Shown in pieces: positions 207 through 27,558 of a stretch of 56,440 nt of DNA. The translations under genes were made by a program, and so were the position numbers. The notes beneath the pieces are model-generated. The model had not been told where the DNA came from, did no database searches, and saw nothing but the letters and a program-made list of their open reading frames with translations. This stretch comes from Octopus bimaculoides (lineage: Eukaryota): NCBI RefSeq assembly GCF_001194135.2, contig NC_069005.1, forward strand, positions 20,198,460 to 20,254,899. Reading direction: 5' to 3'. The number at the start of each line of letters is the position of its first letter. Positions within the stretch are counted from its first letter, which is position 1.

Positions 207-1161
207 TCAAAGAATTGTTTGATAATTAAGAGACATGAAATACCGTCCAAAGATATGTCTAATGTTAGAGGAAGCACCATCGACAGAGTAGATATCTGTG
301 TCCAAGCGCTCGTTTGGCTGTTTCAGGTACTGCGAGCCCCGATAATCAAACAGCCACTCTTCTAGGAACTGCTCTTTGTTCAGCTCACAGATGTTGTGCA
401 GCACACAGCATGCTTCTACGATCAGGGCGGCATTATCAATTTTAAGAATCTGCTTCCTCAGCAGACACTGCCAGCGTCCCTTCAGACGACGGAAACTGGT
501 CTCTATCACAGTGTTGGCATTGTCCAGTCTACTATTGAATGTATTTTGCATGACTGTTAATTTTCTGCCACTACTACTACTACCATTACTGTTGCTGCCA
601 GCCTCAAAAGGCACCATCAGCCAATTCAACAACGGGTACTGTGTGTCCCCGATGAGTACGATTGGCACTTCCTTGTCCCCCATCTGCCGATACTTAGGAA
701 CAAACAATTTACTGTTTCTTCCATGTTCATAAACTTTGGAATTTGAAAACACGTGGATGTTATGCAAACGACCTGGCCATCCTGTGCTGATGCTGGTAAA
801 ACAGAACTCATCGTCGGCAACAGCTTGCAGTACTATCGACGCCCATCCACAACTATTGTAGTAGTCCGTGCTGTTGTCCTGAGGAGTGAGGATTGGTACA
901 TGGGTGGCATTGATCACACCAGCACAGTTCGGGAAGCCCCACCGACTCTCAAAGCTCTCAATCACACTTTCAAGTTGCTTGCCTCTTGGAATGTAAATGT
1001 ATTTTTTACTGAGTACTTTCACAATCGACTGGCACACCGACCTTAGAATCGAATGCGCACTTGATATTGCAATACCAAACATGTTTTCAGCAATCCGATA
1101 ATCACAGCCAGAAGATAGGATATAGACTGTTACAGCGACCCATTTTTCAATAGGAAGATTC
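207..1161 (-). CDS. Harbinger/PIF transposase-derived protein (HARBI1/ALP1-like, DDE_Tnp_4 fold), coding exon 2
   Basis: Translation has family motifs GFPNCAGVINATH, SIVLQAVAD, GWPGRLHN, LIGDTQYPL, VIETSFRRLKGRW and ACCVLHNICE. Acceptor ttttgttttgcag|G lies at 1162/1161; stop ends at 207. Confidence 0.9.
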
Positions 1162-1239
1162 CTGCAAAACAAAACAAAAGGAAAACAATATATTATTGGT
1201 TTTATACAAAGACTTAAAAGCAGAAATTTGGGAAGGCAA

Positions 1240-1400
1240 TGATGGTGATGGTGGAGCAGATGATGATGATGATGGGGTGATGATAGAGCTGATGATGATG
1301 ATGATGATGATGATGAAGTGATGGTGGAGCTGATGATGAAATGGTGGTGGTGGTGACGATGATGATGATGAACTAGATGCCCCTCTTCTGCCACCACCTC
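1240..1400. repeat. Intronic (GAT/GGT)n trinucleotide microsatellite
   Basis: gatgatgat/ggtggtggt runs upstream of the exon-2 acceptor of the HARBI1-like gene. Confidence 0.85.
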
Positions 1401-3555
1401 CACTATTAAGAACCACTCTATTACAATAACATTGTCTCTTTTTTCTCAACTCATAGTTTTAATTGGTTTCCTGATGCTTACTGTATTAAATATAAAATAT
1501 GTTAAACACTAAAATATATTATGGCTGGAATTGAAATGTAGGATGATCAAAGCTGAAACGAACACCTGTTGTTAGATTAAGGCTAGCATGGGGCTAAACG
1601 ACAGAAACCTCTCTATGATAAAAAAAAGTGGTTTCAAATTTTGGCACAAGGCCAGCAATTTGGGGGAAGGGATAAGTCTATTACATCAACCCCAATGTTC
1701 AACTGGTACTTAATTTATCAACCCTGACAGCATTTGAACTTAAAATTTCAAGTAAGAGGAAATGCCACCAAGCATTTTTCCCAGCATGGTAATGATTCTG
1801 CCAGCTTACCACCCACTTCCGCTAAGCTAAAAAAATATTAACATCGGCAAGCCACAGTAATACTAGGAACAGGTGCAGCAATGTGGTTGCGAAGCTTGCT
1901 TCCCAACCATACAATTTCAAGTTCAATCCAGCTGTGCAGTACCTTGGACAAGTGTCTTCCACTATGGTGCCAGGCCATCCAAAAGTCTTCCAATCAAGGG
2001 GAATGCTGGCCTCCTCGCCTTGCCAATGGGGTGGCATCATTTGAAAGAAAAAATGGTGTAAAGCACATTCTGATCAATGATGTATAACAACAATAGTCTG
2101 GTTGATCAAATAGTATATCATTATGATCATCATTTAATGTCTGTTTTCTATGCTGGCATGGATTACACGATTTGACAGGAGCTGGCAAGCAGAACTGCAC
2201 TAGGTTCCAGTCTGATTCGGCCTGGTTTCTACAGCTGATGCCCTCCCTAATGCCAACCACTTTACAGGGTGTGCTGGATGTTTTTACATGATCCTTTTCA
2301 CATGATACCAGCACAGGGTCCTTGTAGGCCAATCACCTTCAGCAGGGTAGCAGCATTAACACTTCTGCTGTGGAGGATGCTGCTTGAGTACAGCAAGGCA
2401 CCAGATATTTCAGACCTTTGTCATCTCCTCCATAAGATTCAGTGTCCTGAGATCATCCTTCAATACTTCATCCTATGTCTTCTTTGGTCTCCCTCTTCCA
2501 GGAGTTCCACCTACTTTGAGGGATCAGTACTTTTTTATGGAGCTGTGGACATCCATCTGCATCACCTGACCAAACCAGTGCACTCTCCTCTTTCGCAGAC
2601 TGCATCTAATTCCTCTTATGCCTAACGTCTCTCTCAACACACTAGCACATGTACAGTTACATTGCACATCCAGTGGAACATACTAGCCTCATTCCTCTCT
2701 AGCCTTAATTGAGTGAATGAAATGTACATCATTTACCCAGAGAATCCAGAAGAATCCAACAGGAACGAATTGTATTCAACCCTGATAATAATTATAAAGA
2801 ATGTTCTTCAATAACGATATACGAATATAAACTTAAACCTGGTATGTGGTGCAGAAACGAATGTCATCTACTATTAAAGCTTGATATTCACGATCCTCAT
2901 CATCATCATTTAACATCTGTCATCCATACTGGCTTGGACAGTTTGACTAGGGCTGGTAAGCTGAAAGGCTGCACCAGGTTCTAGTCTGATTTGGTATGGT
3001 TTCTACAGCTGGATGCTCTTCCTAATGCCAACAACTCTGAGAGTGTAATGGGTGCATTTATGTGCCACCGGCATGGGTGCCAGTTGCATGACACCAGCAA
3101 CTGCCATGACTACAAATTCACTAGGCTTGATGGATCTTCTTTCTCAAGCACAGCATATTGCCAAAGTTCTCAGTCATTTGTCATTGCCTCCGTGAAGTGC
3201 AGCACTCGAAAGGTGTGTTTTACATGCCACCAGCACAGATTGCTAGTTCTGCAGCACCTGCATCAAACATGTTGCCTCTGTGAGGCCCAATGCTCAAAAG
3301 ATGCTTTTTACATGCCCCAGTTTTGTATGTATGTATATATATATATATATATATATATAAATATTCTTTTATTCTCTTACATGTTTCAATAATTTGACTG
3401 TGACCATGCTGGAGCATTGCCTTGAAGGGTTTTAGTAGAACACACCGACCCCGGGACTTATTTTTTTAAGCTTAGTACTTATTTTATCAAACAGCTAATT
3501 TACAGGGACATAAGCACACCAACACCAATCGTTAAACAGTGTTTGGGGGACAGAG

Positions 3556-3591
<36 letters not shown>

Positions 3592-4714
3592 GACAGGCTT
3601 CTCTCAGTTTCCATCTACCAAATCCACTCACAAGGTTTTGGTCAGCCCAACACTATAGAAGACAGTTGCCAAAATGCTACACAGTGGGACTGAACCCAGA
3701 ACCATATATATATCTTCTATCTTTTACTTGTTTCAGTAATTTAACTGCGGCCATGTTGGGGTACCACCTTGAAAGGATTTTTAGTCAAACAAATCATTAC
3801 CAGGACATTTTTTTAAAGCCTGGTATTTATTCTATCAGTCTCTTTTGCCAAACCACTAAGTTACAAAAACGTAAACACACCAACACCCATTGTCAAGCGG
3901 TGGTAGAGGACAGACACAAAATCACAAACACNNNNNNNNNNNNNNNNNNNNNNNNNNNNNNNNNNNNNNNNNNNNNNNNNNNNNNNNNNNNNNNNNNNNN
4001 NNNNNNNNNNNNNNNNNNNNNNNNNNNNNNNNNNNNNNNNNNNNNNNNNNNNNNNNNNNNNNNNNNNNNNNNNNNNNNNNNNNNNNNNNNNNNNNNNNNN
4101 NNNNNNNNNNNNNNNNNNNNNNNNNNNNNNNNNNNNNNNNNNNNNNNNNNNNNNNNNNNNNNNNNNNNNNNNNNNNNNNNNNNNNNNNNNNNNNNNNNNN
4201 NNNNNNNNNNNNNNNNNNNNNNNNNNNNNNNNNNNNNNNNNNNNNNNNNNNNNNNNNNNNNNNNNNNNNNNNNNNNNNNNNNNNNNNNNNNNNNNNNNNN
4301 NNNNNNNNNNNNNNNNNNNNNNNNNNNNNNNNNNNNNNNNNNNNNNNNNNNNNNNNNNNNNNNNNNNNNNNNNNNNNNNNNNNNNNNNNNNNNNNNNNNN
4401 NNNNNNNNNNNNNNNNNNNNNNNNNNNNNAAACTTTTGTCTAGAATCAATTACTAGCCTGATAGACCCCGCTATGTCAAGATGGACTTATATATTCTTCC
4501 TCACATTTGGATTTTATATATGCTCTCTCCCACTTGGATTTAATATGTTGCCACATTTATAATATGTCTTTTTTCTACATTTTCTACATTTTCGTGCAGC
4601 TAAAGATTGCTCTTCATATTGCATTTAAGGTAATGCTCACATTACTTAAATAAATTGAAGTAGCATGAAACGTGCGTACTGCAATCACTTTTGAAATCCG
4701 TGTTGCTTATTATT

Positions 4715-4750
<36 letters not shown>

Positions 4751-5073
4751 TATCCTTTAGTCAAAGTGCGTTCGAAAGTTCATGATCGTAAAACTGAGTA
4801 TATCTCAATAAAAAACTTGAATGAGGAATGAGGTACCGAGTAGGGACACCTCACCCCATTAGTATTTATGGATCTGCCTTAAATAAGTTGGCACGTCATG
4901 CAATGTTAACTATTCCATAGTTTTATACACTTGCGTGTATGTGTGTATGGTGGGATTTGGTGTTTATTAAAAATATCTTTAAAATATTGGGTAATAAAAA
5001 CAAAGCACTTGACATGAGTTTATATTGAAAACACAACTGTGTCCATCCTTTTCAAGCTCCATACCTTTTATAG

Positions 5074-5290
5074 CAGTGGTTCTCAACCATTTTTTGCCTA
5101 TGGACTCCTTTAATTCCTATTTCACTTCGGGAAACCCTCATAAACAGTGTTTTAAACATTCCATTATATTTTTATAATTAAATATTATTAGGAATTGTAT
5201 TAAAAAATTTTGTGTATTGCAGAAGCAAAAGCAATTTATTGCAAATAAACTTTAACAAAATCTTATATGTACTCAGTTTGAGAACCACTG
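5074..5290. mobile_element. hAT (Charlie-like) MITE
   Basis: TIRs CAGTGGTTCTCAA / TTGAGAACCACTG; imperfect 8-bp TSD ttttatag / cattatag. Confidence 0.75.
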
Positions 5291-5724
5291 CATTATAGTT
5301 TCAAACTAAGCAGAAAAGAGGAGTAATTAAAGGAGTAGAGGGGAAATCAGTAATTGAAAGATAGAACATGTTTCCGTTATAAAAACAAACAAAATCGTTA
5401 AGGCGTCGGAAAAGAATCACATGCAGCATTCCTTCCGTTTTTTTTCACATTCTGAATTCCAATTCCGCCGAGGTCGACTTCGCCTCTCATCCTTCCGAGG
5501 TCGATAAAATAAAGCACCAGTCAAGTACAGAAGCCGGTATAATCGACTAGGCCCCTTCACCCAAAACTGCTGGCCAGGTGCCAAAATTAGAAACAACACA
5601 CACTCATACATGAAATATACAAGGTGAATGTGACTTCGAATTTTCACCAGAGAGAGAAAGATGTATATATATATATATATATATATCATTATTATTAAGG
5701 TTGATTGTTATGTCGCAATGTGTG

Positions 5725-5758
<34 letters not shown>

Positions 5759-6802
5759 NNNNNNNNNNNNNNNNNNNNNNNNNNNNNNNNNNNNNNNNNN
5801 NNNNNNNNNNNNNNNNNNNNNNNNNNNNNNNNNNNNNNNNNNNNNNNNNNNNNNNNNNNNNNNNNNNNNNNNNNNNNNNNNNNNNNNNNNNNNNNNNNNN
5901 NNNNNNNNNNNNNNNNNNNNNNNNNNNNNNNNNNNNNNNNNNNNNNNNNNNNNNNNNNNNNNNNNNNNNNNNNNNNNNNNNNNNNNNNNNNNNNNNNNNN
6001 NNNNNNNNNNNNNNNNNNNNNNNNNNNNNNNNNNNNNNNNNNNNNNNNNNNNNNNNNNNNNNNNNNNNNNNNNNNNNNNNNNNNNNNNNNNNNNNNNNNN
6101 NNNNNNNNNNNNNNNNNTATTTTGGGGAGATGAAACAATCCTTTACATTGCGTTATTATATTTATATTGACTACCTACAGTAAGGAATTTGGTACGTATA
6201 TATATATATATATATCTCCCCAAAATACGCATTCTTCCTTCTACACACACACACACCTATATATATATATATAAGTAGAATCCTGGTTTAAGCGCTTCAT
6301 ATAATTCTTTATAACTTTTTTACTTTATATATGCGTGCGTGTTACTACTCAGAGTTTCGCGAATATCGCTGATAGCGTTAAATTTTTTTTTTCTATCAAC
6401 GATGTTGCAAAAAGTTTAGTAGTAACAAGAGAGCAGGTAATCTCTAATTTACAATAAATATGTACATTCGACTTCTGTAATAAAGTAGTTTTTCGTCCCT
6501 TAATAAGCTCGTGTGTGTGTGTACAAAATGTTAATCAGTGGTTGTCGTCAACGAAGATGACTTTGTCCACAGTGATTTTAACCTGGCGAGGCACATTTCT
6601 CTCTCTCCCTCTCTCTCAGATTATACAGTTGCAAGCCGAAAACGAAAGAAAACGGATAGGAATGGAATGGATCAAGAGAAGAACAGGAACCTAGTTCGTA
6701 GTGGTGCTTACTATCAGTTAAGTACATTCATACATATATGGATGTGTTTACACACACGTGCACAGATAGATACATACGTATTATATATATACACATATGA
6801 AT

Positions 6803-6898
<96 letters not shown>

Positions 6899-7029
6899 GC
6901 ACACACATATATACATGTATAGGTGTATACTGATTGGGTTTTTTTCTTTTTTTTTGTCACTTAAGTTTAATTTTGATTTCGATATTTGGTCTTCGTTTAG
7001 AATGTTTTACATAATAACCAAAACTCTAC

Positions 7030-7388
7030 CTGGGCATATCTGGAATGGAATATTCTATATCAGATCTGATACAGTTACACAGATATTCAAAAGTTTGTTT
7101 GGACATTCTGAAATTCTCAATCCAATCCTGAGAAGAGAATGTGTTCTGTACAATATGGTCCCACCAGTAGGAGTAACGATTCTTAGTCCAAACCACTCTG
7201 TTGGTGGACGGTTCCAACAAGAGTGTAGGTAATATATTAAATACGAAATACATCCTTTGGCTTGATTGGAATCTAGAAAAGGCTCGGATTCGTCTGAAGT
7301 GCCGTTTTTTCATGTGGTAGCATCTTTTATCGGCTTCTAATCGTCTTTTTCTGATCATTGCGAATACAAATGCGAGTAGTTCAGCCAT
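7030..7388 (-). CDS. HARBI1/ALP1-like protein, coding exon 1
   Basis: ORF from ATG 7388 contains the Harbinger N-terminal motif WIENFRMSKQTFEYLC. Donor AG|gtagag at 7030/7029 is phase 2 and joins exon 2 in frame (…DMP-R-NLPIEKW…). Total 1314 nt = 437 aa + stop. Confidence 0.85.
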
Positions 7389-7491
7389 TTTGAGATGATT
7401 TGATGATTAAAGAAATAAAAAAAAAACAAAATAAATAAACAAATTATCAAAGAAAAGCGGATGTAAACAAGTGAGAAGCTAAGCCTTGCCA

Positions 7492-7499
7492 CCGGAAGT
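7492..7499 (+). promoter_or_regulatory. ETS/GABP-type site CCGGAAGT about 100 bp upstream of the HARBI1-like start codon
   Basis: Exact CCGGAAGT in a locally CpG-enriched segment; function is inferred. Confidence 0.4.
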
Positions 7500-9354
7500 G
7501 GATAACTCAATCGGTGATTTCCTTTCATAAACGTCGGCTGCATTCATTTCATTATTACCGTAATCCCTCAGTTTATCACAGTTTTTCCTTACCTATTTTC
7601 CCCCCAGACTCCATTGTAGCTTTCCACCGCTGAAATATCCTTAAAGAAATATCCACAGTAGGGCATTAGAATAGCGCTATACTATAGCAAACACTCTTGG
7701 CTAGGCTGAGTATAGGTCTATTATGTTTGCTGTGGAAAAACATTCTCGCAATTCCATGTCTCACTAGGAAAAAAGTTTAAAAAATTGGATCCTACGCCCC
7801 ACGTTGGTAATCATTGGTTTAGCGAAACACGATATAATTAGCTTTTCACCTGTTCAAAGCATTTTCATAAGCTTGTCCTAAACGTCATAAATTAGTGTAA
7901 TAAAATATTTCGTTGCTATCTTTACAAGTTGGAGATGATTAGTTTCGATTGAAGATTTCTATAAGACTTTTGTAATTAAAGAGTTATCTGCTTGGCTTTT
8001 ATTTATACCATTAAATATTTGGAAGTTAATTTTGTTTAGTGTGATCATAGAATGTATCCCATTCAATGCAAACGAGTATCATAGGTGATCTACAGAGTAC
8101 ATTATAAATAATTTTTAATACGACTGATGCCTGTTTCTAAATTAAATTTATCTCCATCCTGTGTGTCACATATATGCATTATCTCTTGTTTCATACGTTC
8201 TGAGTAATATAAAGCTTTTCATTCGTGAATATCATTGATACCCTGATCGTTCAAAGTGTTAGGTATGTATATCGTATATGGTGCATGGACGCCAGGGAAA
8301 CAAGTCGTGCGTATCACATGTTATACGTCAGGTCGGGCAAATAGTTGAACAGACCAAATAATTATTTCTAACCTTTGTACAAGGATAAGAATTTGAATAG
8401 GGTGGAGGGATGGGTAAGTTGATTAAATGGAGGTCAGATTTTGTATTGCACTTTATTTTATTAACACCAGTAGGATGAAACGTAATGCTTACTTCGACGC
8501 AATTTGAACTCAGACCTTATAGAGCCAGAATAAATTGCTTCAAATTTTGGTACAAGACCAACAGTTTTACAGAGAAGTAGATAATCGATTACATCGAATC
8601 CAGTACATGGGTGGTACTTTATTTTATCGACCAGAGTGAAATGAAAAGTAATGTTAACCATGGCGGAATTTGAACTCAGAAATTATAGACTCAGAATAAA
8701 TACCACAGGGAATTTTGTCCGGTGCTCTAGCGATTCTGCTAATTCACTGCCCTTACCGGGGAGGCATCTAATAAAAATACAGTAGTTTTTATTAACCTTA
8801 CTATAAATAAAGAACTGTACTATCGGTCATGGCAAAATACACTTCAAATATAGTTTCGCAAAAGAAAATTAAAATTATATCTCTGTTATAATTTTAATAA
8901 ATTTCTTTTTCTTTTCTTTTGTTTTATAATGTGTGGTGTATATTGTAAAGTTTTTTATTTACATTAAAAAACAATAAAACATTGCCCCTAGGTTGTCTTC
9001 GGCTTAATTAATTTTCCGTGTTGAGAGAAAAACATCCCTTCTAATAGTCAATTGAATTAAGGGTTTGCTGTTCTGAATTTGGGTTATGTAATTATTTGTT
9101 ATTTAACTTTAGATTAGATGGGTTGATAGAATATATTACCAGTCAAGTAGTGAAATTTTATTCAAAATACAACATATCCTCACCAACAACCTGTCGCTTT
9201 CTTGGAAAAAACATCGTATTTAAAAGAAAATATTATGCATTAATCTAGATAATACATTTTGAAAACGTTTATCAATTCGTTTTGCAAGATTCCTGATGCG
9301 AAATCGTGTTAAAACAGATATTGTTGTGTTTCGGGATTTTTATTCTATTCTTTT

Positions 9355-9740
9355 ATTTGTTTCAGTCATTTGACTGCGGCCATGCTGGAGCACCGCCTTT
9401 AGTCAAACAAATCAACCCCAGGACTTATTCTTTGTAAGCCTAGTATTTATTCTATCGATCTCTTTTGCCGAAGCACTAGCTTACGGGGACGTAAACACAT
9501 CGGCATCGGTTGTCAAGCGATGATGGGGAACAGGCACAAATACACAAACATACACACACTCACATATTATATATACGACGGGCTTCTTTCAGTTTCCGTC
9601 TACCATATCCACCCACAAGGCTTTGGTTGACCCGAGGCTATAGTAGAAGACACTTGCCCAAGGTGCCACGCAGTGGGACTGAACCCGAAACCATGTGGTT
9701 GATAAGCAAGCTACTTACCACACAGCCACTCCTGCGCCAC
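9355..9740 (-). mobile_element. tRNA-derived octopus-type SINE
   Basis: Minus-strand head ggcgcaggagtggctgtgtggtaag…gttcagtcccactgcgtggcacc. The same family recurs many times in the window (e.g. about 3390-3720, 26935-27260, 34845-35210, 39125-39420, 43270-43500, 45300-45610, 47470-47830). Confidence 0.75.
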
Positions 9741-10437: not shown

Positions 10438-10479
<42 letters not shown>

Positions 10480-10784
10480 TATGCACATATATATGCACAT
10501 ATATATATATATATAATATAGGATAAAATCTTTATGAGAATTTATCAAGTAGTCAGTGTGAAAAAAACCTCATAATGAAAAAAAATTCATCATTTTTTTC
10601 CATAAATATATATAATTTATATAAAGGGCATTAACTGTGTAGTAATGCCTCACGCTTCGAGGGACTAAATAAGTCAAAAACTACCAATATATATATACTA
10701 TAATAATACTCTTGTGTTTTTCTCCGTCACAACATATGAATGAGAACGGAAGGAGTGATGGCAAACTGGTAGTTTCTTTGGGAT

Positions 10785-13130: not shown

Positions 13131-13257
13131 ATGTCGGACGAAGCTTTTCGAAAAGCTGGATTAAATATTGATGAATTAAATAATATACGGTTATTAGATC
13201 CTGATATATTTCAACAGAGCTCTGAACTGAAGGACGCTTGCAAAGAATTTACAGACA
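13131..13257 (+). CDS. IFT20: Intraflagellar transport protein 20, coding exon 1
   Basis: MSDEAFRKAGLNIDELNNIRLLDPDIFQQSSELKDACKEFTD resembles the IFT20 N-terminus (AGLHFDELNKLRVLDP); donor gtaagt at 13258; 127 nt. Confidence 0.93.
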
Positions 13258-15399
13258 GTAAGTTTATTTATTTTGGTTACTTTATGTAATCTTTGAAGAG
13301 AAATCATTTCTCCATAGAAGTAAAACAAGACATTGTTTTGTTGGTAACCAAGGGACATCAATGTAATCAAAATAGTTGGTAGAGATGTAGTTTAGCTTGT
13401 TAAATTAATACTATTTCAGTGAACGAAAGTAATTATCAAATTACAACTGATAATTATTACGTAAATATTGTGCAGCAACGAAAGCTGTAGATATAAAAAT
13501 AGAAGGTTTGTTAATGATTTTTAAAAAAAGTTTAAGTTCGACTTCGGTGCGTCTATATGTATATATAACTCGATAGATCCTGATCTAACGTAGGATCTTT
13601 TACTAGCTAGAAATAACAGCTATATGTCCCTCAAGTCACAGTCACCGTCGTAAAGATGTGGTTCTGGATTCTCTGCACAGAGAGAAAAGATGTTTGTTTT
13701 ATCACGGCTGACCTGGAAGCTAAACAACAAAAAAAAACATGAAAGAAATTTCGTGTAACCTGTGAATCATAGAAAATATTAGGATCAGACAACGTAGGGG
13801 CCGAAGCCCACATTTTGGGGAGTAGCGAAAAGTGGGGACGGGGTTAGGGTGAAGAATCTACAAAATTCACTTCCCTTCCAAGAAACATAGCGATTTTCAT
13901 ATGAGTCGAACTTAGGACGTCAAGAAACGCAACTAAAATCGGTAGGTAAGTATTTTCGATGAGAAGCAGAGGAAAAACAATCCGGAATTTATTTAGAGTG
14001 TCGTCCATGAAATTGAAGACGAATAATTTGGCTACTTAGCGCCATCCGAATGGTATCTTCCATTTGTAGGTCAGCAAGATTACAGCATATTTTGGGGTTA
14101 AACAACAAGTGATTATTAAACGTCTTAGCATTTTCCATTCATGTTCACACACGCCTTAGATGCACTGACCGAATCTTCTCTTACACCTCCCCTCTTGTAC
14201 CTTTTGAGTTTGTTCTGGCACTCCATCACTACCATTTTTATCTCGTTCCCAACTACTCCCATCCACACCTTTATGTAATGTTAGGTAGCCATTATCTCCT
14301 CCATAACAACACACCTGTGCTCGTCTCTCTATCATACTTTAGCCTTTCAACACCTTGCATAAATCCACCTGCCTCTCTCACATGTACATTTAGTTGCAGG
14401 GGGACTTTTTCCTCCCCCCCCCCTGTTCTTTGCTGTCTTACAATAAGTTACTTGGCGGCCTCACTAGTGTTAGTGATATGAAAAAAAGCACTCAGTACAT
14501 ACTGGTTAGTTTTAGGAAGGGCATCTAGCCATAGAAATCATGGCAAAGCTGATACTGGAGCCACTAGATCATGTCAAACTGTCCAACCCATGCCAGCATA
14601 GAAAAAGGGACATTAAACAATGATCGTGATGAAATATATTGTGGGGAGGACTGTTTCCTTTTATTAGTCATTTGATTGTGGCCACCATGGAATGCAACCT
14701 TCACGTGTATCCTACTTAGTTATATCAAACCCTAAATACTTGTAGACTAAGAAGGCATGGTGGTCTGGTAGCAAGGGTGTCGAGTTTTTGATCCTAAGGT
14801 TATGCACTTGATTCTTGGACCAGGTAGTACATTGTTCTCTTGAGCAAGGCACTTCATTTCATTTCATGTTGCTACAGTCATATCAACTGAAAATGAGTGT
14901 CTGCCAAGTGCTGGTCCAATTCCCATTCCTTCCAGCTCTCACAGTCAGGATGTTTGCTGGCTGAAGGATAGAAGAATCAAGAGGGTGCTTATGCCTGTTT
15001 TCGACTACATATGTCCCTAAAACAATTAGCAAAACCTTGGTTCATGTTACCATGTCATCCTTCATTCTGAGCGACAGCCAGAGTTTAGTTACTTGCAGAC
15101 TAATGGTACTGTATTTTATCGATCCCCACAAATATGGAAGGCAAAGTCATTCTGAATGAGATTTGAACATAGAGGGATGAACTAAATACCATATGATTAT
15201 TATTATTATTATTATTATTATTAAGAAGTGTCAATGGGATTAGCCCCAACCCCCAAAATTTCAGGCCTTGTGCGTGTAGTAGAAAGGATCATTACTATTA
15301 TTAAGAAGGTGGTAAGCTGGCAGAATTGTTAGCATGCTGGATGAAATGCTTAGTGGCATTTCGCCCATTGCTATGTTCAGAGTTCAATAACTACCAACC

Positions 15400-16000
15400 T
15401 GTACTGCAACTCCCCTGGTATTGTCTTCACATCTCTCAGATACTTTCTGTTTTTTTTCTGCCAACCAACATGAAATCAATCTCTGTCTCATTCCCTCCTG
15501 CACTGAAAGTCACCTTCCTTTTCTCTGTTTTCCTAAACCATGTGTTCACCATACACAACTGTTTCTCATCGCAAAACTCCAATAGCATCCTTCCTTCCAC
15601 ATTTCTCTCCCCGATTCCATTTCCCCCATGCACACCCTCAAAGCCCTGGATCCATTTCCCAACATGTCCATTAAAATCACCCATGCCCAAAACCAATTCA
15701 TCTACACATTCACCTTCCTCTTCCTCAATTCTTCACACACCTCAGTTCCCCTTCCATGCAGACTGCCTACATTCCAACTTCCCAACATCGTCCCAAACTT
15801 TCTAGGAGCTGCATTTTCTATAGGGAGCATGCCCTTGCTTACCCCCAACCTTAGTTTCTAGACATGAGTGGTCCCAAGACCAAGGCTTCTACCACGATTT
15901 TTAAGAAATGTGGTGGAAAACTAGCTTGGAAGGCAGGGATACTACTCCCTGAGACCCCTTTTGGAGCCCCTCTACCTATCAATTCTACAATCCACCACCT
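15400..16000 (-). mobile_element. RTE-clade LINE endonuclease fragment
   Basis: GDFNGHVG…GVHGGNGIGERNVEGRMLLEFC…VNTWFRK…EIDFML. Confidence 0.8.
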
Positions 16001-16070
16001 TGGTGTTATCATTGTTATTCATGTAACTTACTATGTACTAAACCCGTGATGTTTTGTTTGTTTATTTCAG

Positions 16071-16156
16071 AAATCGAGTCCTTTCATAAAATCGTAGCGT
16101 CTGTCATTGCAGTAGTTGACAATGTTGCAAAGGAAGTGGAAAAAGAGAAAATGAAG
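16071..16156 (+). CDS. IFT20: IFT20 coding exon 2
   Basis: ttatttcag| (K)IESFHKIVASVIAVVDNVAKEVEKEKMK |gtacat; 86 nt, phase consistent. Confidence 0.92.
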
Positions 16157-17682
16157 GTACATCTACCTCATTACTTCTCAAACTTTTTAAACCATTGCTT
16201 CTTTTTCTCTCACTAATATCTATTCAATGCCCCACCACCACTAGCTATGATAATCATGAATATCGATATATATGCACCATATTAGATTAAATACACCACA
16301 TAGAAATACTGATGTTTAGGCATTAACCCTTTAGCATTCAGATTCCTGTGTTAAATGTAATGTTTATTCACAGTGTTTTGAATTAATCATCCATTATCTT
16401 GTAGCTTCTTCAAATGTTGGGCCTCAGGGATGCAAGGACAAGTGACCAAGACCTTGGTGATATGCTGTGCTTGAGAAGCCCAGTATACCCTTCATTACCA
16501 CCCGTCTGATAAAGATACACCAAGCACATGCACCACAACCATATGTGCGCGACATGGTGGTCTCATATCAGGATAAACAGCGCATGACCTTGCAGGTGGG
16601 GCCCAGTTAGAATTTTCTTCAGGTCAAGTAGCCCATCCTACTCAAAAGGTCACTGAATAAGGTTTGTTTTAAGGATGATGAACGAAACACCCATATTTCC
16701 AGAGGTGAATTATTCAAACCTCAAAGAATTCCCCTCAACACATAGCGATGATGCTCCTCCACTACTTCTGCTCATGATCAGAAATGCACATATCATCAGC
16801 CACCAAGGGACATGCTCAACTGGTTAAGGTCAAACAACTGACAAGCAAATCTGTGGTATTGAGCAGAATATTTGTGTAGCCCATCTTTTATACCAAGACA
16901 AACCAATGTACATGATAACACTATCAATCAGTTAAGATCAGAAGTCATGAGAGCCACTGTCTGGTAGAGTGCCAAGCTGGCAGAATTGTTAGCACACCAG
17001 GCAAAATTCTTAGCAGCATTTTATCCATCTTTATGTTCTGAGTTCAAATTCCACCAAGGTTGACTTTGCCTTTCACCCTTTTGAGGTTGATAAAGTAAGT
17101 ACCAGTTGAGCATCGGGGTCAATGTAATTGACTTAGCTCCTCCCCTGATCTTACTGGCTTTGTCCCAAAATTTGAAACCAATATTACTGAAAGTGGCAAA
17201 CTGGCAGAATCATTAGAGCATCAGACAAAGTGCTTGGTGGCATTTCATCCAGCTCTTTATTCTGCTCTGAGCTCAAATACCATCAAAAACAATTTTACCT
17301 TTCATCCTTGCAAAGACAACAAAAAATACAATACCCATCACGTACTGGGAATAATGTAATCAACTTTCCCAACTCTTCAAAATTGTTGTCCTTGTACCAA
17401 AATTTGAAAGATTTACTACTATTGAGGGTGATGAGCTGGCAGAATTGTAGAAGGGTTGGGAAAAGAATACGTATTTGTTCCTACTAGAGTCATTTTTACC
17501 TTTCATCCTTTTGAGGTTGATAATAAAAATACTACAAATTGAACACAGGAGTTAATGTAATCAACTTCACCCACTCCTTAAAACTGCTATCCTTGTGTCT
17601 AAATCAGAAGCCATTATTATTATTGCAGTTGTTTTTATTATTCAAGAAATCATTGTTTGTATTATATGTTTCCCTTAATCAG

Positions 17683-17786
17683 GCAATTGGTTCAAGGAAC
17701 ATGCTGAAATCCATAACGAAACAGAGAGAAGCAGAACAGATGCAACTTTTGGCACTGATCACAGAAAAAACAATGCAGTTAGAAAG
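17683..17786 (+). CDS. IFT20: IFT20 coding exon 3
   Basis: cag| [34 protein letters not shown](R) |gtcaga; 104 nt. Confidence 0.95.
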
Positions 17787-19536
17787 GTCAGAGTCTACTT
17801 TTTCACATTTTTTTAATACTTACCAAGTCTGCAGGAAACAGCAGAGCCTGAGCTTTGTAGGCCCTCCAAGATCAGTGAGTTTGATGCCATTAATGTTCTG
17901 TTTAAACTGTTGTAGCTCAACACCTGCAGGAATGACATGAGTAGAGATTCCAGGGGCACCTTGACTGAGGCCTTATAAGTGGATTTGGTAGACAGAAATT
18001 GAAAGAGGCCTGGCATATGCATGCATATCACAATCATCATCATTTAATGTCTGTTTTCCAAGATGGCATGGGTTGGATGGTTCAACAGGAACTGGCAAGC
18101 CAGAGGGCTATTCTATGCTCTAATGTCTGCTTTGGCATGGCTTCTGTGGCTGGATAACTTTCTTTCTGCCAACCATTTTACACAGTGTAGTAGATGCTTT
18201 TTACATGGCACCAACAACAGTGAAGTCACCAAATAACCTACAAGATGATGCTCCGCAACCAAAGGGTGGAGAGCACTGTTGGGAGACAGAGAAAGGTGTT
18301 TTGCATCAGAGAGGAAACATGGCTACCTCAGGTGGGGAGTACACATGTCACATAAAAGGCGTCCAGTACATTCTGTAAAGTGGGTGTCATTAGGAAGGGC
18401 AGGCGGTAGAGCTTGGCGCAGTCTTCTGACTTGCCAGATCCTATCAAACCATCCAACCCATGTCAACACAGAAAATGAATGTTACATGATGATGAGGATA
18501 CATATACATGTGTGAGTCTCCTTGTCTTGACATCATGTGATAGTTGTAAATAAATGTCACACAAGCAGTGTCCTTCACCTTTCACTTCCAGTCTTCTGTG
18601 AAAATGTGTCCACTCATGGAGAAATATTACTTTAGTCAGAAACAGGTGAAGATTGATGACAATAAGGGCATCCAGCCATGAAAGCTCAGCCTTAATGAAT
18701 CCAATCTATGTGAACCATGACTTATCTCATGCTCTTTATTTACCTTAGCAGTGTTAGAGACACCATGAAAACAGGGTCACACACGCTACTCTTCCTGTCC
18801 CTCATTGACAAAGACATTGCAGAAAAATACAAAACAAAGGACAACAGTCTTTCACAAGTTGTAATTGGCCCCAGAAGAATGAAAGCTACTGTCAAATCTT
18901 GCTGTGATCTGAACATCAAGAGACATGTAAATGCTGAAATCTTACTCCACTGCTGTTATTATTATTCTTTTCTACTCTAGGCACAAGGCCCAGAATTTGG
19001 GGGGAGTGGGCCAGTCAATTAGATTGATCCCAGTACACTACACTGGTACTTAATTTATCGATCCCGAAAGGATGAAAGATAAAGTCAACCTCAGTGAAAT
19101 TTGAACTTAGAACGTAAAGGCAGACGAAATACCGCTAAGCAATTTGCCCAGTGTGCTAACATTATTATTAATGTTGTTAAGGCAAAGAGTTGGCAGAATC
19201 GTTAGTGCACTGGGCTAAATGCTTAGCAGTATTTCGTCTGCCACTACGTTCTGAGTTCAAATTCCACCAAGGTCGACTTTGCCTTTCATCCTTTTGGAGT
19301 CATTCATTTGTAGTATTCTGCAAAAAACATGTCTGGCCATCGGGAAATATTATCTTGCTTGGAAACAGGAAGGGTATCAAGCCATAGAAAATCTGCCTCA
19401 ACAAATTCCTTCTCACCCATGATGGCATAGAAAAGTGAACATTAAATGATGATATATGAATTCTTACAACAACTACTATCATACCTTTACTCTATTTCTT
19501 GTAATGAAATTGTTTTTCCTTGTCTTTTATTTTCAG

Positions 19537-19618
19537 ATTACGCATCCAACATGAAGCTTTGTTAAAACAGGAAAGAGATCAAAATGAATTTATTGAACAG
19601 TTAATGCTAGAAAAATAA
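19537..19618 (+). CDS. IFT20: IFT20 coding exon 4 (last)
   Basis: ttttcag| (R)LRIQHEALLKQERDQNEFIEQLMLEK*; four exons sum to 399 nt = 132 aa + stop. Confidence 0.93.
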
Positions 19619-24974: not shown

Positions 24975-25157
24975 CTATTTCTTCCGAAGCCTGTGCCTGT
25001 CCAGCCTCTCTTCTAAGTCTTCATCGCTGTGATAGACGGTCGCCATTGAGCCACTGCGTGACGGCATAACAAAGTCCTTGTCAGGTTTTATATCGACATT
25101 TTCATAACACAAAACATTTAAAGTTTCCTCAAAGATCCTTGCTTCCGGATAATCAAC
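24975..25157 (-). CDS. KCTD10: KCTD10/BACURD coding exon 5 (last)
   Basis: cag| VDYPEARIFEETLNVLCYE…HSDEDLEERLDRHRLRKK*; five exons total 861 nt = 286 aa + stop. Confidence 0.9.
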   Translation of the reverse strand, partial: VDYPEARIFEETLNVLCYENVDIKPDKDFVMPSRSGSMATVYHSDEDLEERLDRHRLRKK

Positions 25158-25806
25158 CTGGAATGTTTGATGGTGCAAAAAGGGAAGTAAAGAAAGATTA
25201 AAACATGTAGGACTACATTCAATATGAAGCATAACTCCCTACCAATACTACCAGACTCTTATTCCATTACCTGATTAGAAATAACCTCTCATCAACTGAG
25301 AAAGCCATCTCCAGCAATGCTACACCCTTCCCTCAGTTTTAGCAGGGAAGGGTGTAGCATTGCTGGAGATGTCTTTCAAGTTACCAATGGTGCCATTACC
25401 AAGTCCTGAAGTCCATAACAAATACCACCTGTAGGTTTAGGCACTGCACATCTAACCAATGAAAAAGAAAAGTATTTTCATTGGGGGCAGAAGACGGATC
25501 AAATCTTCAGGCCTGAGAAAGCAACTGTAAGTTCCCAGAAAGTGTTGCCATAATATCTCTAAAATCAGACATGAGGTTGTTCTCAGAAGCTTCTCCAAAC
25601 ACATTATCTAATTAGGATTCTCTGTTAACAAGAAGGACCATACTGAGGAGGTAAATGAGAGGAAGAGAGCAAAGTATGCTGATCTATTGGGAAAATGTTG
25701 GAAAACCAAGCAGAAAAAGAGGATTAGCAGTAAGTCCTGATTACTACAGGGGCCAATAGGTGAAGGACCATCAAGTTGGCCACCAAAGTAGTGGAAGTGG
25801 TTTTAA

Positions 25807-26028
25807 CCCTTTTGATACTAACCCACTTGAGACCATCCCTGGTTCTTTGACACAAACTTCTTATTTTAAAGTGTCCTAAATTAAAACCTTGCATCTAAAT
25901 TCCATGTTAATTTATGTTCCAAACACCAGCTTAATATTGAAAAAGTTATTTTACTAAATGCATCATTATTTTGTAAATCAACTGAAAGAAAAGCAGTGTA
26001 TTTTAATAAAAATATGGTAACAAAATGG
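25807..26028. mobile_element. piggyBac-like MITE (second family)
   Basis: TTAA on both sides (25803-06, 26029-32); ends CCCTTTTGATA… / …TAACAAAATGG. Confidence 0.6.
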
Positions 26029-26711
26029 TTAATATACTGATATATATTTGTCTTTTGTTATCTTCCAAACACCATCTTAATTTACTGAAATACATCTGTC
26101 ATTAAGAAAAGGATACTTTGGATAATTGTTGTCTCAGATAACCATATCTAAACTGCCTTTGGTTATCAGTCTGTTTGACCATACTTGTCAGTACATAAAG
26201 AACTAGATATATTTGTTTTAAAGTGATCTGAATTAAAACCTTCCATCAAAATTTCTTGTCAATTTATGTTCTAAACACCAGCTTAATAACAAAGTTATTT
26301 TACTAAATTCTACAGTATATTAAAAATTGAAATAAAGGCAGTGTATTTCAACAGAAATCTGCTAACAAAATGGCTAATATACCAATATACATTATAGTCA
26401 TTTTGTTATCTTCCAAACCCCATCTTAATTTACATTTGTCTTTAAGAGAGGAGTGTATGAGATAATTGCTTGTCCCAGATAGCCACAGCTTGATTGACTT
26501 TGCTTAGAGGTCCGTTTGCCCAGGGCTGACCAGGAGAAACAACTACTTATGTTTATACAAAGTTTTGTCCTCTGGAATCAAAGAGATGGCATGTTAATTG
26601 GGTCTTCATTCTCCATCTATAACCCTTTTGATATCAACCCACCTGAAACGGCCCCTGGTTCTTTAATACAAATTTACTGTAAAATCAAAATTAAATGGAA
26701 ATTGTAGTTGT

Positions 26712-26935
26712 GGCCAATGCCAGTGCCACCCGACTGGCTCCCATGCTGGTGGCACACAAGCACCATTCATGCATGGGTTGTTGCTAGTTCCGCCTAACTG
26801 GCTCCCTGTGCCAGTGACACGTAAAAAGCACCATCTGAACATGGTCGATGCCAGCCACACCGCCCCGACTAGCTCCTGTGCCAGTAGCACATAAAAAGCA
26901 CCATCTGAACGTGGCCAATGCCAGTGCCGCCTGAC
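26712..26935. repeat. Imperfect minisatellite (about 60-75-bp units) preceding a SINE
   Basis: Recurrent gccaatgccagtgcc…ctggctcc(c)tgtgccagt…aaaaagcaccatctgaac. Confidence 0.65.
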
Positions 26936-27359
26936 TTGCTTACCAACCACATAGTTCCGGGTTCAGTCCCACTGTGTGGAATCTTGGGCAAGTGTCTTCT
27001 ACTATAGCCTCGGGCCGACCAAAGCCTTGTGAGTGGATTTGGTAGACGGAAACTGAAAGAAGCCCGTCGTATATATGTATATATATATATGTGTGTGTAT
27101 GTGTTTGTGTGTCTGTGTCACTTAGCGGTTCGGCAAAAGAGACCGATAGAGTAAGTACTAGGCTTACAAAGAATAAGTCCCGGGGTCGATTTGCTCGACT
27201 AAAGGCGGTGCTCCAGCATGGCCGCAGTCAAATGACCGAAACAAGTAAAAGAGTAAGAGTAAAGAGTAATGAAAAGAAAGAGAATAAAATGAAAGAGATA
27301 ATAAAAGAGATGATCAAAGATGGAGAGGAAGAGACTAAAACATGGCAGACAGATATTAC

Positions 27360-27558
27360 CTTGGTGTGTTTTTTGTCAGTACCATATACTATTGATGTAC
27401 AGCAGACTTCGCCAACCTTCTGGGAGCGACTGTAGAAGTACCAGCAACATATTTCAACGGTGCCAATGACATCCTTGATGAGCAACAAACGGTTGCTGAA
27501 CTGAAGTGACAGCTTGTCAAAGAGCTCGATATTCTTCAGAAAGTTATCATCTGAGTTA
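27360..27558 (-). CDS. KCTD10: KCTD10/BACURD coding exon 4
   Basis: ttgcag| [20 protein letters not shown]…IKDVIG…EICCWYFY…[17 protein letters not shown] |gtaata; 199 nt. Confidence 0.93.

What the first reader, a model, noticed from the sequence alone, without database searches (positions are those of the whole stretch)
207..7388. Intron-containing Harbinger transposase derivative with a broken catalytic centre: candidate domesticated ALP1/HARBI1-like gene
Seen: an intact 437-aa two-exon ORF with a 5.9-kb GT-AG intron, an ETS site upstream, and no TIRs that I could find, in a window where every other TE-derived coding sequence is degraded. Seen: the usual IDG(T/S)H motif reads INATH (N204) and G.xHD reads GRLHN (N254), while GD (D292) and IE (E340) are kept. 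Established: Harbinger transposases were domesticated as vertebrate HARBI1 (partner NAIF1) and plant ALP1 (partner ALP2), a catalytically degenerate PRC2 antagonist. Inference: this may be an independently domesticated, non-catalytic chromatin regulator in a cephalopod lineage.
Basis: partly seen in the sequence, partly recalled or inferred. Interest (0 to 1): 0.78.

Follow-up and report, generated by a model that had tools for sequence, protein, structure and literature searches.

The report
Octopus gene tamed from Harbinger transposase
This is a real, intact two-exon octopus gene that began as a Harbinger "jumping gene" enzyme, has lost the residues needed to cut DNA, and has been kept by selection at the same chromosomal spot in Octopus and the paper nautilus Argonauta. 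It is a new lineage example of a known process; what it does is untested.

Summary
Splicing 7388..7030 to 1161..207 (minus strand, GT-AG, phase 2) gives a 437-aa protein identical to RefSeq XP_014775530.1 (Octopus bimaculoides LOC106872888). Both N gaps lie inside the intron, and the gapless O. sinensis locus is collinear across them.

The protein is a DDE_Tnp_4 (PIF/Harbinger-type) transposase homologue. Of the 119 non-octopod homologues aligned, 96 carry D/D/D/E at four acidic positions. Octopus has N204/N254/D292/E340 and Argonauta hians has G/N/D/D.

Orthologues sit head-to-head with IFT20 in O. bimaculoides, O. sinensis and A. hians, with the same intron position and phase. The KCTD-like gene beyond IFT20 is also shared with A. 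hians.

- O. bimaculoides vs O. sinensis: 48 synonymous and 8 non-synonymous changes, omega about 0.04-0.05 (LRT p = 8e-19).
- Octopus vs Argonauta: 75% amino-acid identity with saturated synonymous sites.

No TIRs, no second copy and no adjacent Myb-like gene were found, although the nearest mobile relatives carry one.

Verdict: a domesticated, almost certainly non-catalytic Harbinger transposase gene at least as old as the Octopus-Argonauta split. It arose independently of HARBI1 and ALP1. A chromatin or PRC2 role is analogy only. It is a new member of a known kind, of moderate interest.

The parts
7030..7388 (-). Exon 1 coding part (aa 1-119 plus two bases of codon 120). It encodes a long basic N-terminal helix and the start of the helical DUF8040/HTH-like region.
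   Evidence: AF2 helix 2-58. This is the most conserved segment between Octopus and Argonauta (87%), although only 22% among mobile relatives.
1162..7029 (-). Single GT-AG intron, phase 2, about 5.9 kb including two N gaps (3932-4429, 5759-6117). It is filled with microsatellites and SINE-like repeats.
   Evidence: Collinear with the 4.9-kb O. sinensis intron at about 85% identity. Same position and phase in A. hians, where the intron is 1.66 kb.
207..1161 (-). Exon 2 coding part (aa 120-437 plus stop). It holds the rest of the helical region and the RNase H-like DDE_Tnp_4 core.
   Evidence: It is 96% identical in nucleotides to O. sinensis, against about 85% for the intron.
393..911 (-). DDE_Tnp_4 domain (aa 204-376). 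Altered acidic positions: N204 (911-909) and N254 (761-759). Retained: D292 (647-645) and E340 (503-501). R336 of the family is N here.
   Evidence: Pfam E = 4e-28. Column states in the homologue alignment. Strand/helix placement in the AF2 model.
7389..7544 (-). Conserved proximal promoter / 5' leader block, with the ETS-like core ACTTCCGGT at 7491-7499.
   Evidence: Nearly identical in O. sinensis; homology stops abruptly at 7544. Only CCGGAAGT in the window. The extended motif ACTTCCGGTrGCAArG is also upstream of the A. hians gene.
13131..19615 (+). Neighbouring IFT20 gene, head-to-head (exons 13131-13259, 16061-16156, 17680-17787, 19535-19615). It serves as the synteny anchor.
   Evidence: IFT20 is annotated in the same place in O. 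sinensis and A. hians.
24978..27449 (-). Last two exons of a KCTD-like (BTB_2) gene (27357-27449 and 24978-25160). It serves as a second synteny anchor.
   Evidence: 92-100% amino-acid identity to the end of the BTB_2 gene that lies beyond IFT20 in A. hians.

Best explanation
An ancient PIF/Harbinger-type transposon inserted next to IFT20 in an ancestor of Octopus and Argonauta. It lost its ends and its Myb-like second gene, and acquired or kept one intron and a host promoter. Its transposase gene was then retained as a single host gene.

The protein keeps the transposase fold and most family-conserved positions. It has lost at least one, probably two, of the acidic residues that bind the catalytic metals, plus several conserved basic residues. 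It therefore most likely no longer cuts or joins DNA.

Selection acts on the protein, and most strongly on the N-terminal basic helix and the C-terminal tail, which vary freely in mobile relatives.

By inference from the other domesticated Harbinger transposases (HARBI1-NAIF1, ALP1-ALP2, HDP1-HDP2), it most likely works as a non-enzymatic nuclear adaptor. It would bind a Myb/SANT-type DNA-binding partner or another protein complex.

Shown: gene structure, orthology, purifying selection, loss of catalytic residues, loss of transposon hallmarks. Inferred: loss of activity, nuclear adaptor role, any chromatin function.
For: (1) The spliced model equals RefSeq XP_014775530.1. It matches DDE_Tnp_4 at E = 4e-28.

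(2) Orthologues.
- O. sinensis XP_029651090.1 is 98% identical. The locus is collinear through flanks and intron.
- A. hians locus L005 has exon 1 at 10001-10359 and exon 2 at 12022-13627, one open frame of 654 aa. It is 75% identical over 435 aligned residues.
- The gene order KCTD-like / IFT20 / this gene is the same in Octopus and Argonauta.

(3) Selection.
- Obim-Osin: Sd = 48, Nd = 8, NG86 omega = 0.039. ML GY94 omega = 0.05, LRT against omega = 1 is 78.6, p = 8e-19.
- CDS is 95.7% identical, against about 85% for the intron.
- Obim-Ahia: pN = 0.137, pS = 0.87, LRT = 428.

(4) Active site.
- 96 of the 119 non-octopod homologues aligned have D/D/D/E/R. Octopus has N/N/D/E/N and Argonauta G/N/D/D/S.
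- In the AF2 model (pLDDT 90.6), N204 lies on the first strand of the RNase H-like sheet. D292 lies just after strand 288-290, and E340 on helix 323-349. These are the canonical DDE positions. N254 starts the first helix.
- Octopus departs from the family at 18 of 93 highly conserved columns. All 18 are also non-consensus in Argonauta and 11 are identical, so the changes predate the split.

(5) Transposon hallmarks are gone.
- No TIR within 2.5 kb either side.
- No second copy in the window or L001, and no Myb relic in the window (weak fragment query) or among ORFs of 90 aa or more in the downstream flanks of L001 and L005.
- The nearest relatives P0025 and P0036 each carry a convergent Myb_DNA-bind_4 gene 60-80 bp after the stop and have no intron. 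P0005, also intronless, is followed about 390 bp on by a Myb-like ORF recognised by eye only.

(6) New constraint. Octopus-Argonauta identity is 87% in aa 1-60 and 67% in aa 381-431. Mobile relatives share only 22-25% there.

(7) A conserved ETS-like promoter motif is present in all three species.
Against: - No expression, localisation or interaction data could be consulted. No spliced transcript contig was on record.
- Genome-wide copy number in octopods was not testable.
- Loss of activity is inferred from residues only. D292 is retained in all three species, and E340 is kept or conservatively replaced by D, which could reflect a residual metal site or merely fold constraints.
- No Myb/SANT partner was identified.
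- The neighbour-joining placement of the octopod branch is weak. The best sister group (P0005/P0025/P0036) appears in 35% of 200 bootstraps. The source element subgroup, and full independence from the degenerate vertebrate genes of the same family, are therefore not rigorously shown.
- The Octopus-Argonauta synonymous distance is saturated and shifted by GC3 (0.74 vs 0.47). Omega on that branch is qualitative only.
Confidence: 0.85

Rival explanations
1. It is still an enzyme: a nuclease or recombinase with a variant active site (N/N/D/E in Octopus), as has been suspected for HARBI1.
For: The fold is predicted with high confidence. D292 is retained in all three species, and E340 is kept or conservatively changed to D. 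The strong purifying selection is compatible with an enzyme.
Against: The first acidic position is N in Octopus and G in Argonauta. The glutamate is D in Argonauta, and the HD aspartate is N in both. The site is therefore not even conserved among the orthologues. Conserved basic residues (R119, R127, K224, K303, R336, R351) are also replaced. A study cited in PMC4671723 found that mutating one residue of the DDE triad of the rice element Ping drastically reduces transposition.
Confidence: 0.06
2. It is just an old immobilised transposon copy or processed relic drifting neutrally, and the intact ORF is luck or an annotation artefact.
For: The window is repeat-rich and the gene is TE-derived.
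Against: There are 48 synonymous against 8 non-synonymous changes at an orthologous locus, with omega = 1 rejected at p = 8e-19. A 1965-nt open frame is kept in Argonauta despite saturated synonymous sites. The intron diverges three to four times faster than the CDS.
Confidence: 0.01
3. It is not an independent octopod event. It belongs to an older domesticated family shared with the catalytically degenerate vertebrate genes of the same clade (coelacanth, caecilian, squamate and teleost proteins).
For: Several vertebrate groups among the 120 best hits also lack the acidic residues. In 47 of 200 NJ bootstraps the octopod sister group contained one of the sequences flagged as lacking the full D/D/D/E set. 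In 31 of these it was P0079, of unknown origin, and in 11 the coelacanth and caecilian proteins.
Against: The replacement residues differ in every group (N/N/D/E; C/C/D/E; S/H/D/E; G/E/G/E; G/S/D/D). The closest sequences, at 40-47% identity, are intact two-gene mobile elements. No orthologue was seen in any other mollusc or invertebrate. The squamate and teleost groups are not among the 20 sequences most often found in the octopod sister group.
Confidence: 0.06
4. It specifically acts like plant ALP1, as an accessory subunit that antagonises Polycomb Repressive Complex 2.
For: Only the parallel: a Harbinger transposase with a degenerate triad (ALP1 has DGA for DDE, PMC4671723), and the RefSeq name given to the O. 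sinensis protein.
Against: ALP1 is a land-plant gene, so there is no orthology. Pfam Plant_tran matches only marginally, at 22.5 bits against 98.5 for DDE_Tnp_4. In plants the link to PRC2 runs through ALP2, a Myb-derived partner (PMC7282668), and no such partner was found here.
Confidence: 0.08

Closest known systems
Insect PIF/Harbinger-derived genes (DPLG, APLG1-2, LPLG1-2, BPLG1-2; PMC9710019)
   Same: Lineage-restricted, single syntenic genes derived from the transposase. They lack TIRs and TSDs and are under purifying selection (dN/dS 0.04-0.33). Some have a conserved two-exon structure, and some are 'transposase-only' domestications without an adjacent MADF gene.
   Different: A different phylum and an independent event. 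The octopod gene sits head-to-head with IFT20 and carries taxon-specific low-complexity loop insertions, which are very large in Argonauta. No expression data were examined here.
Vertebrate HARBI1 (partner NAIF1)
   Same: A host gene derived from a Harbinger transposase. It interacts with a Myb-like-derived partner that imports it into the nucleus (PMC9392472). Its biological role is still unknown.
   Different: HARBI1 is confined to jawed vertebrates. It is generally described as keeping the DDE residues (own knowledge, not checked here). The octopod protein has lost them and is closer to mobile elements (40-47%) than to any named vertebrate protein. No partner is known.
Plant ALP1 (partner ALP2) and HDP1/HDP2
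   Same: Domesticated Harbinger transposases with a degenerate triad (ALP1 has DGA) that act as non-catalytic subunits of chromatin complexes (PMC4671723, PMC7282668, PMC5339849).
   Different: These are plant genes of separate origin. Their PRC2 and histone-acetyltransferase association rests on genetics and proteomics that have no counterpart here. The RefSeq label 'ALP1-like' reflects similarity only.
Mobile two-gene Harbinger-type elements from marine metagenomes (P0005/L002, P0025/L003, P0036/L004)
   Same: The same protein family (DUF8040 + DDE_Tnp_4) at 40-47% identity, with the same overall length and predicted architecture.
   Different: They have an intact D/D/D/E/R set and no intron. 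L003 and L004 carry a convergent Myb_DNA-bind_4 gene right after the stop, and L002 a Myb-like ORF about 390 bp on. Their clusters hold several near-identical members. The octopod gene has none of these features.

Membership tests
PIF/Harbinger-type (PHIS superfamily) transposase protein family | Significant match to the DDE_Tnp_4 catalytic-core profile | tested here: met
   PF13359 E = 4e-28, 98.5 bits, aa 204-376. Also found in the A. hians orthologue, E = 3e-17.
PIF/Harbinger-type (PHIS superfamily) transposase protein family | Intact acidic catalytic residues (DDE, plus the conserved HD aspartate) | tested here: not met
   N204/N254/D292/E340 in Octopus and G/N/D/D in Argonauta, against D/D/D/E in 96 of the 119 non-octopod homologues aligned.
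Mobile Harbinger element | Terminal inverted repeats and TWA target-site duplication flanking the gene | tested here: not met
   Only one chance 11-mer was found between the 2.5-kb flanks in O. sinensis. The long inverted pairs are microsatellites. The window itself has only 206 bp after the stop.
Mobile Harbinger element | Second gene for a Myb/SANT-like DNA-binding protein next to the transposase gene | tested here: not met
   Present in L003 and L004 by Pfam, and as a Myb-like ORF recognised by eye in L002. No annotated gene and no ORF of 90 aa or more other than low-complexity or repeat translations lies in the 10 kb downstream in O. sinensis or the 8.7 kb downstream in A. hians. A tblastn with the partial, mostly low-complexity L002 Myb-like ORF found nothing in the window or L001. 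The full Myb proteins of L003 and L004 were never searched, because that script failed.
Mobile Harbinger element | Multiple similar copies in the genome | not testable with these tools
   No whole octopod genome could be searched. There is no second copy in the 56-kb window or in L001. The 90% protein cluster holds only the two Octopus orthologues, and no other protein above 47% identity was found apart from Argonauta.
Domesticated transposase gene (criteria of PMC9710019) | Orthologues at a syntenic position in diverged species | tested here: met
   Beside IFT20 in O. bimaculoides, O. sinensis and A. hians. A KCTD-like gene lies beyond IFT20 in both Octopus and Argonauta.
Domesticated transposase gene (criteria of PMC9710019) | Purifying selection on the coding sequence (dN/dS significantly below 1) | tested here: met
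   Omega = 0.04-0.05, LRT p = 8e-19. Against Argonauta, pN = 0.137 and pS = 0.87.
Domesticated transposase gene (criteria of PMC9710019) | Evidence of transcription or translation | not tested
   Only Gnomon-type predicted models exist. No transcript contig with this product is on record.
HARBI1 orthologue | Member of the jawed-vertebrate HARBI1 clade, with NAIF1 as partner | tested here: not met
   [quoted passage not shown] The proteins labelled 'HARBI1' among the hits are similarity-named relatives at 30-36% identity. A tree with a bona fide HARBI1 sequence was not built.
ALP1 orthologue / PRC2 accessory subunit | Land-plant ALP1 clade; physical association with PRC2 through ALP2 | not testable with these tools
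   The ALP1 clade is restricted to land plants (PMC4671723), so orthology is excluded on taxonomy. PRC2 association needs wet-lab work.

The most novel reading that the evidence does not exclude
The octopod gene may be a 'transposase-only' domestication that no longer depends on a Myb-like partner. In this reading its newly constrained N-terminal basic helix and C-terminal tail, together with expandable acidic/Gly/Ser-rich loops, form a new interaction module. That module would have been recruited into an octopod-specific nuclear regulatory function, from a compact promoter region shared with the cilium gene IFT20. It would be the first functionally relevant Harbinger transposase domestication described in molluscs.
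Probability: 0.25. Interest if true: 0.6.

Novelty: new member of a known kind. Interest (0 to 1): 0.45.

Why it matters
Harbinger transposases have been tamed repeatedly, in jawed vertebrates, insects and plants. Where the function is known, they have become non-catalytic subunits of chromatin complexes.

This gene extends that pattern to octopods, animals whose genomes are famously repeat-rich and whose lineage-specific genes are of interest for their unusual biology. I found no paper describing a domesticated Harbinger transposase in a mollusc.

It offers a clean comparative case:
- three orthologues with fixed synteny;
- a catalytic centre that decays differently in each lineage while the fold is held;
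- N- and C-terminal segments that gained constraint after capture.

That pattern says which surfaces to test for the new function. It also corrects database labels: 'ALP1-like' and 'putative nuclease HARBI1' are similarity names, and the Argonauta gene is split into three partial models.

Tried and rejected
- PDB by sequence: no hit at E <= 1. Foldseek of the AF2 model against PDB: nothing below E = 0.17, with piggyBac transposase and retroviral integrases as the weak top hits. No solved relative is available to map the active site. Model coordinates are not returned, so residue distances could not be measured.
- Squid, cuttlefish or Nautilus orthologues were sought in three ways: a full-length search, an exhaustive representative search and an N-terminal profile of the three orthologues. 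Nothing turned up beyond Argonauta.
- I tried to reach decapodiform loci through IFT20. The only non-octopod IFT20 hits closer than the gastropod and bivalve proteins (75-78% identical, unnamed, possibly cephalopod) lie on about 1-2 kb Logan contigs, probably transcript-derived, so synteny could not be tested.
- The newer O. bimaculoides assembly was fetched to close the N gaps. It has the same sequence and the same gaps.
- Myb partner: tblastn with the partial L002 Myb-like ORF against the window and L001 gave only noise. A genome-wide partner search was not possible.
- TIR/TSD of the related element in L003, to learn its subgroup (Harbinger vs Nuwa): no convincing ends.
- NJ tree: poorly resolved for the long octopod branch. 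No ML program was available.
- P0357, labelled HARBI1, proved to be a truncated relative of the same TE-like family, not a usable HARBI1 reference.
- Literature searches by accession and by HARBI1 + octopus found nothing relevant.
- The 398-aa ORF at 207..1403 listed mechanically is rejected as the gene. Its first 80 codons are a (CAT)n/Ser microsatellite in the intron, upstream of the acceptor.

Full report
**What is there.**

On the minus strand an ATG at 7388 opens a 359-nt exon that ends at 7030 and is followed by GTAGAG. A pyrimidine-rich tract and AG at 1163-1162 precede a second exon, 1161..207, that ends in TGA. Joined in phase 2, they give 1314 nt with a single terminal stop and a 437-aa product. 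That product is residue-for-residue identical to RefSeq XP_014775530.1, 'uncharacterized protein LOC106872888' (formerly 'putative nuclease HARBI1') of Octopus bimaculoides. The window is a stretch of O. bimaculoides chromosome record CM046625.1. The gene model is therefore real but not new. Its interpretation is what needed testing.

**The assembly gaps.**

The runs of N at 3932-4429 and 5759-6117 both lie inside the 5868-nt intron (1162-7029), so no codon crosses them. A scaffolding error could in principle have brought two unrelated exons together. The gapless O. sinensis locus L001 rules this out.
- It carries the same two exons 4.9 kb apart.
- Its intron is collinear with the window on both sides of each gap: window 6895-6214, 5758-4708 and 3766-3370 match L001 10947-11635, 11999-13040 and 13544-13933.
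- The first gap (359 N) corresponds to about 360 bp in O. sinensis.
- The stretch around the second gap is about 440 bp longer than in O. sinensis if the estimated 498 N is taken at face value.

The protein also aligns across the splice junction without any gap to intronless relatives. The newer O. bimaculoides assembly holds the same gaps.

**Family and active site.**

Pfam places aa 204-376 in DDE_Tnp_4 (E = 4e-28), with a marginal Plant_tran match. The 120 best database hits were aligned. Apart from the O. sinensis orthologue, they are 30-47% identical proteins carrying DUF8040 + DDE_Tnp_4.

Of these 119 non-octopod homologues, 96 carry D, D, D, E and R at the columns that read N204, N254, D292, E340 and N336 in the octopus protein.

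An AlphaFold2 model built on this alignment is confident (mean pLDDT 90.6). Its element order is that of an RNase H-like core:
- N204 is on the first strand (199-209).
- D292 directly follows strand 288-290, in the typical 'hydrophobic strand then D' context (IVLIGD).
- E340 is on the long helix 323-349.
- N254 begins the first helix after the third strand.

From established knowledge of DDE enzymes, positions 204/292/E340 are the canonical triad and 254 is a fourth, near-invariant acidic residue. Whichever three are catalytic, at least one is lost.

More broadly, the octopus protein departs from the family at 18 of 93 columns that are at least 85% conserved. These include six basic residues (R119, R127, K224, K303, R336, R351). 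No solved structure of this family exists to refine this.

**Orthologues and synteny.**

O. sinensis XP_029651090.1 is 98% identical (428 of 436 residues). Its locus aligns with the window through the upstream region, the intron and the 3' end.

[quoted passage not shown] Its locus L005 shows that the annotation cut one gene into three models.
- Exon 1 is 10001-10359, with donor GTAGGT.
- Exon 2 is 12022-13627, with acceptor CCCAG|G.
- Together they form one open frame of 654 aa with no internal stop.
- The intron is at the same codon and phase as in Octopus.
- The extra length comes from three in-frame low-complexity insertions in loops. One of them lies at the site of the Ser/Asn/Gly-rich loop that is already octopus-specific relative to mobile relatives.

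In all three species the gene lies head-to-head with IFT20. In Octopus and Argonauta a KCTD-like BTB_2 gene follows IFT20 in the same orientation.

About 155 bp upstream of the ATG is almost unchanged between the two Octopus species. It contains the window's only CCGGAAGT. The extended motif ACTTCCGGTrGCAArG recurs 240 bp upstream of the Argonauta ATG, as the only copy in that 22-kb locus.

**Selection.**

| Comparison | Result |
|---|---|
| Obim-Osin differences | 56 nt: 48 synonymous, 8 non-synonymous |
| Obim-Osin NG86 | dS = 0.20, dN = 0.008, omega = 0.039 |
| Obim-Osin ML (GY94, F3x4) | omega = 0.05; omega = 1 rejected, LRT 78.6, p = 8e-19 |
| Obim-Osin nt identity | CDS 95.7%; aligned intron about 85%; all collinear non-coding blocks about 87% |
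| Octopus-Argonauta | 75% aa identity, pN = 0.137, pS = 0.87, LRT 428 |

These substitutions arose at an orthologous locus after speciation, so the constraint is on the host, not on a transposing lineage. The two Octopus species are reported to have split about 34 My ago (10.1101/2023.05.16.540928) or 13-33 My ago (PMC13282606).

Against Argonauta, synonymous sites are beyond saturation. This is aggravated by a GC3 shift from 0.47 to 0.74, so omega there is only qualitatively far below 1.

Constraint is uneven in an informative way.
- aa 1-60, a long basic helix, are 87% identical between Octopus and Argonauta but only 22% among mobile relatives.
- The C-terminal tail, aa 381-431, is 67% against 25%.

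**History of the active site.**

Argonauta reads IGATH, LHN, GDTQY and VMDTSF, which is G/N/D/D.
- The HD-to-HN change and ten other departures from the family consensus are shared with Octopus. All 18 departing positions are non-consensus in Argonauta. The protein had therefore already left the transposase sequence space before the Octopus-Argonauta split.
- The first aspartate became AAT (N) in Octopus and GGC (G) in Argonauta.
- The glutamate became GAC (D) in Argonauta only.

The former metal site thus keeps drifting while the surrounding fold is held. That is what one expects of a non-catalytic protein.

**Transposon hallmarks.**

- Between the 2.5-kb flanks of the O. sinensis gene there is only one chance 11-mer in inverted orientation. 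The long inverted pairs are microsatellites.
- There is no second copy of the protein in the window or in L001.
- The nearest relatives are genuine mobile elements, mostly from marine metagenomes. P0005, P0025 and P0036 are intronless. P0025 and P0036 are followed, 60-80 bp after the stop, by a convergent Myb_DNA-bind_4 gene. P0005 is followed about 390 bp on by an ORF that looks Myb-like by eye.
- Nothing comparable follows the octopod gene. No gene is annotated, and no ORF of 90 aa or more beyond low-complexity or repeat translations, in the 10 kb downstream in O. sinensis or the 8.7 kb downstream in Argonauta. A tblastn with the partial P0005-locus Myb-like ORF found nothing in the window or in the O. 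sinensis locus. The better Myb queries from L003 and L004 were not run, because that script failed.
- The only other TE-like ORF confirmed in the window is a degraded fragment, RVT_1 at 12125-12511, below threshold.
- Genome-wide copy number could not be tested. The 90% protein cluster holds just the two Octopus orthologues, and no other protein above 47% identity exists in the collections apart from Argonauta.

**Comparison with known cases.**

The gene meets the published criteria for PIF/Harbinger domestication: synteny, purifying selection, loss of TIR/TSD and, as far as can be seen, single copy (PMC9710019). It resembles the insect 'transposase-only' events most closely, including a conserved two-exon structure and omega of 0.04-0.3.

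It is not HARBI1, which is reported only from jawed vertebrates (PMC9392472). It is not ALP1, a land-plant gene with DGA for DDE (PMC4671723). The RefSeq names are similarity labels.

My neighbour-joining tree puts the octopod pair next to mobile elements (P0005, P0025, P0036), but with only 35% bootstrap support. The coelacanth and caecilian proteins appear in the octopod sister group in only 11 of 200 replicates. The squamate and teleost groups are not among the 20 sequences most often found there. Each of these vertebrate groups has different replacement residues. Independence from HARBI1 and ALP1 is therefore safe. Independence from every other animal domestication is likely but not rigorously shown.

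**Mechanism.**

*Shown:*
- a selected, intact, catalytic-centre-deficient transposase fold;
- its own conserved promoter motif;
- no linked Myb gene.

*Inferred:*
- It no longer cleaves DNA.
- It serves as a protein or DNA-associated adaptor. The conserved basic N-terminal helix is a candidate nuclear-import or binding element, with clusters RKRR and KKRHFRR invariant in all three species.
- It may still use the surface with which Harbinger transposases bind Myb-like proteins.

A role in chromatin regulation is a reasonable guess from ALP1/ALP2, HDP1/HDP2 and HARBI1/NAIF1, but nothing here tests it.

**Verdict.**

It is extended from one genome to three octopods and to a date before the Octopus-Argonauta split.

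It is a new member of a well-known kind, since Harbinger transposases have been tamed repeatedly. The gene is already present as an automatic model but, as far as I could find, is undescribed in the literature. Interest is moderate.

Noticed in passing
proteins P0096-P0102, P0119 (squamates); P0104-P0107, P0114, P0115 (teleosts); P0055 (Latimeria); P0069 (caecilian): Within the same DUF8040 + DDE_Tnp_4 family, several vertebrate groups also lack the acidic residues, each with its own replacements (G/E/G/E; G/S/D/D; C/C/D/E; S/H/D/E). One group carries a zebrafish-style gene name (zmp:0000000634). These may be further, separate domestications.
   Followed up: partly
L005 10001-13627 (Argonauta hians BAAFZT010000066.1): The deposited annotation splits one 654-aa open reading frame into three partial models (10001-12373, 12419-13124, 13286-13627). 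The ORF carries three large in-frame low-complexity insertions (Gln/Asp/Gly/Ser-rich) in loops of the transposase fold.
   Followed up: yes
L005 coding sequence vs window 207-7388: GC content at third codon positions of the aligned codons is 0.74 in Argonauta against 0.47-0.53 in Octopus. This pushes the proportion of synonymous differences (0.87) above the saturation limit. The cause is unknown; it could be a regional GC shift or biased gene conversion.
   Followed up: partly
window 13131-19615 (+) and 24978-27449 (-): IFT20 (four coding exons) lies head-to-head with the gene, 5.7 kb between the two ATGs (only 1.1 kb in Argonauta). The last two exons of a KCTD-like BTB_2 gene lie beyond it. 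The order and orientation are the same in Argonauta.
   Followed up: yes
window about 1200-1400 (-): A (CAT)n / Ser-codon microsatellite immediately upstream of the splice acceptor stays in frame with exon 2. It inflates the mechanical ORF to 398 aa, with a His- and Ser-rich false N-terminus.
   Followed up: yes
window 9343-9738, 26935-27256, 30634-30853, 39203-39417, 3597-3859: Copies of a short interspersed repeat (77-95% identical to copies in the O. sinensis locus, including in the intron). Abundant TA/CA-type microsatellites border most assembly gaps.
   Followed up: no
L001 5922-9828 (O. sinensis), corresponding to window 7544-7654: O. sinensis has about 3.9 kb of extra sequence inserted directly upstream of the conserved promoter block, where O. 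bimaculoides has about 110 bp. Homology resumes abruptly at the block. This suggests that only the proximal 155 bp or so is needed.
   Followed up: no
window 12125-12511 (-): A degraded reverse-transcriptase fragment (RVT_1, 23.5 bits, below the Pfam cut-off) lies between the gene and IFT20.
   Followed up: partly
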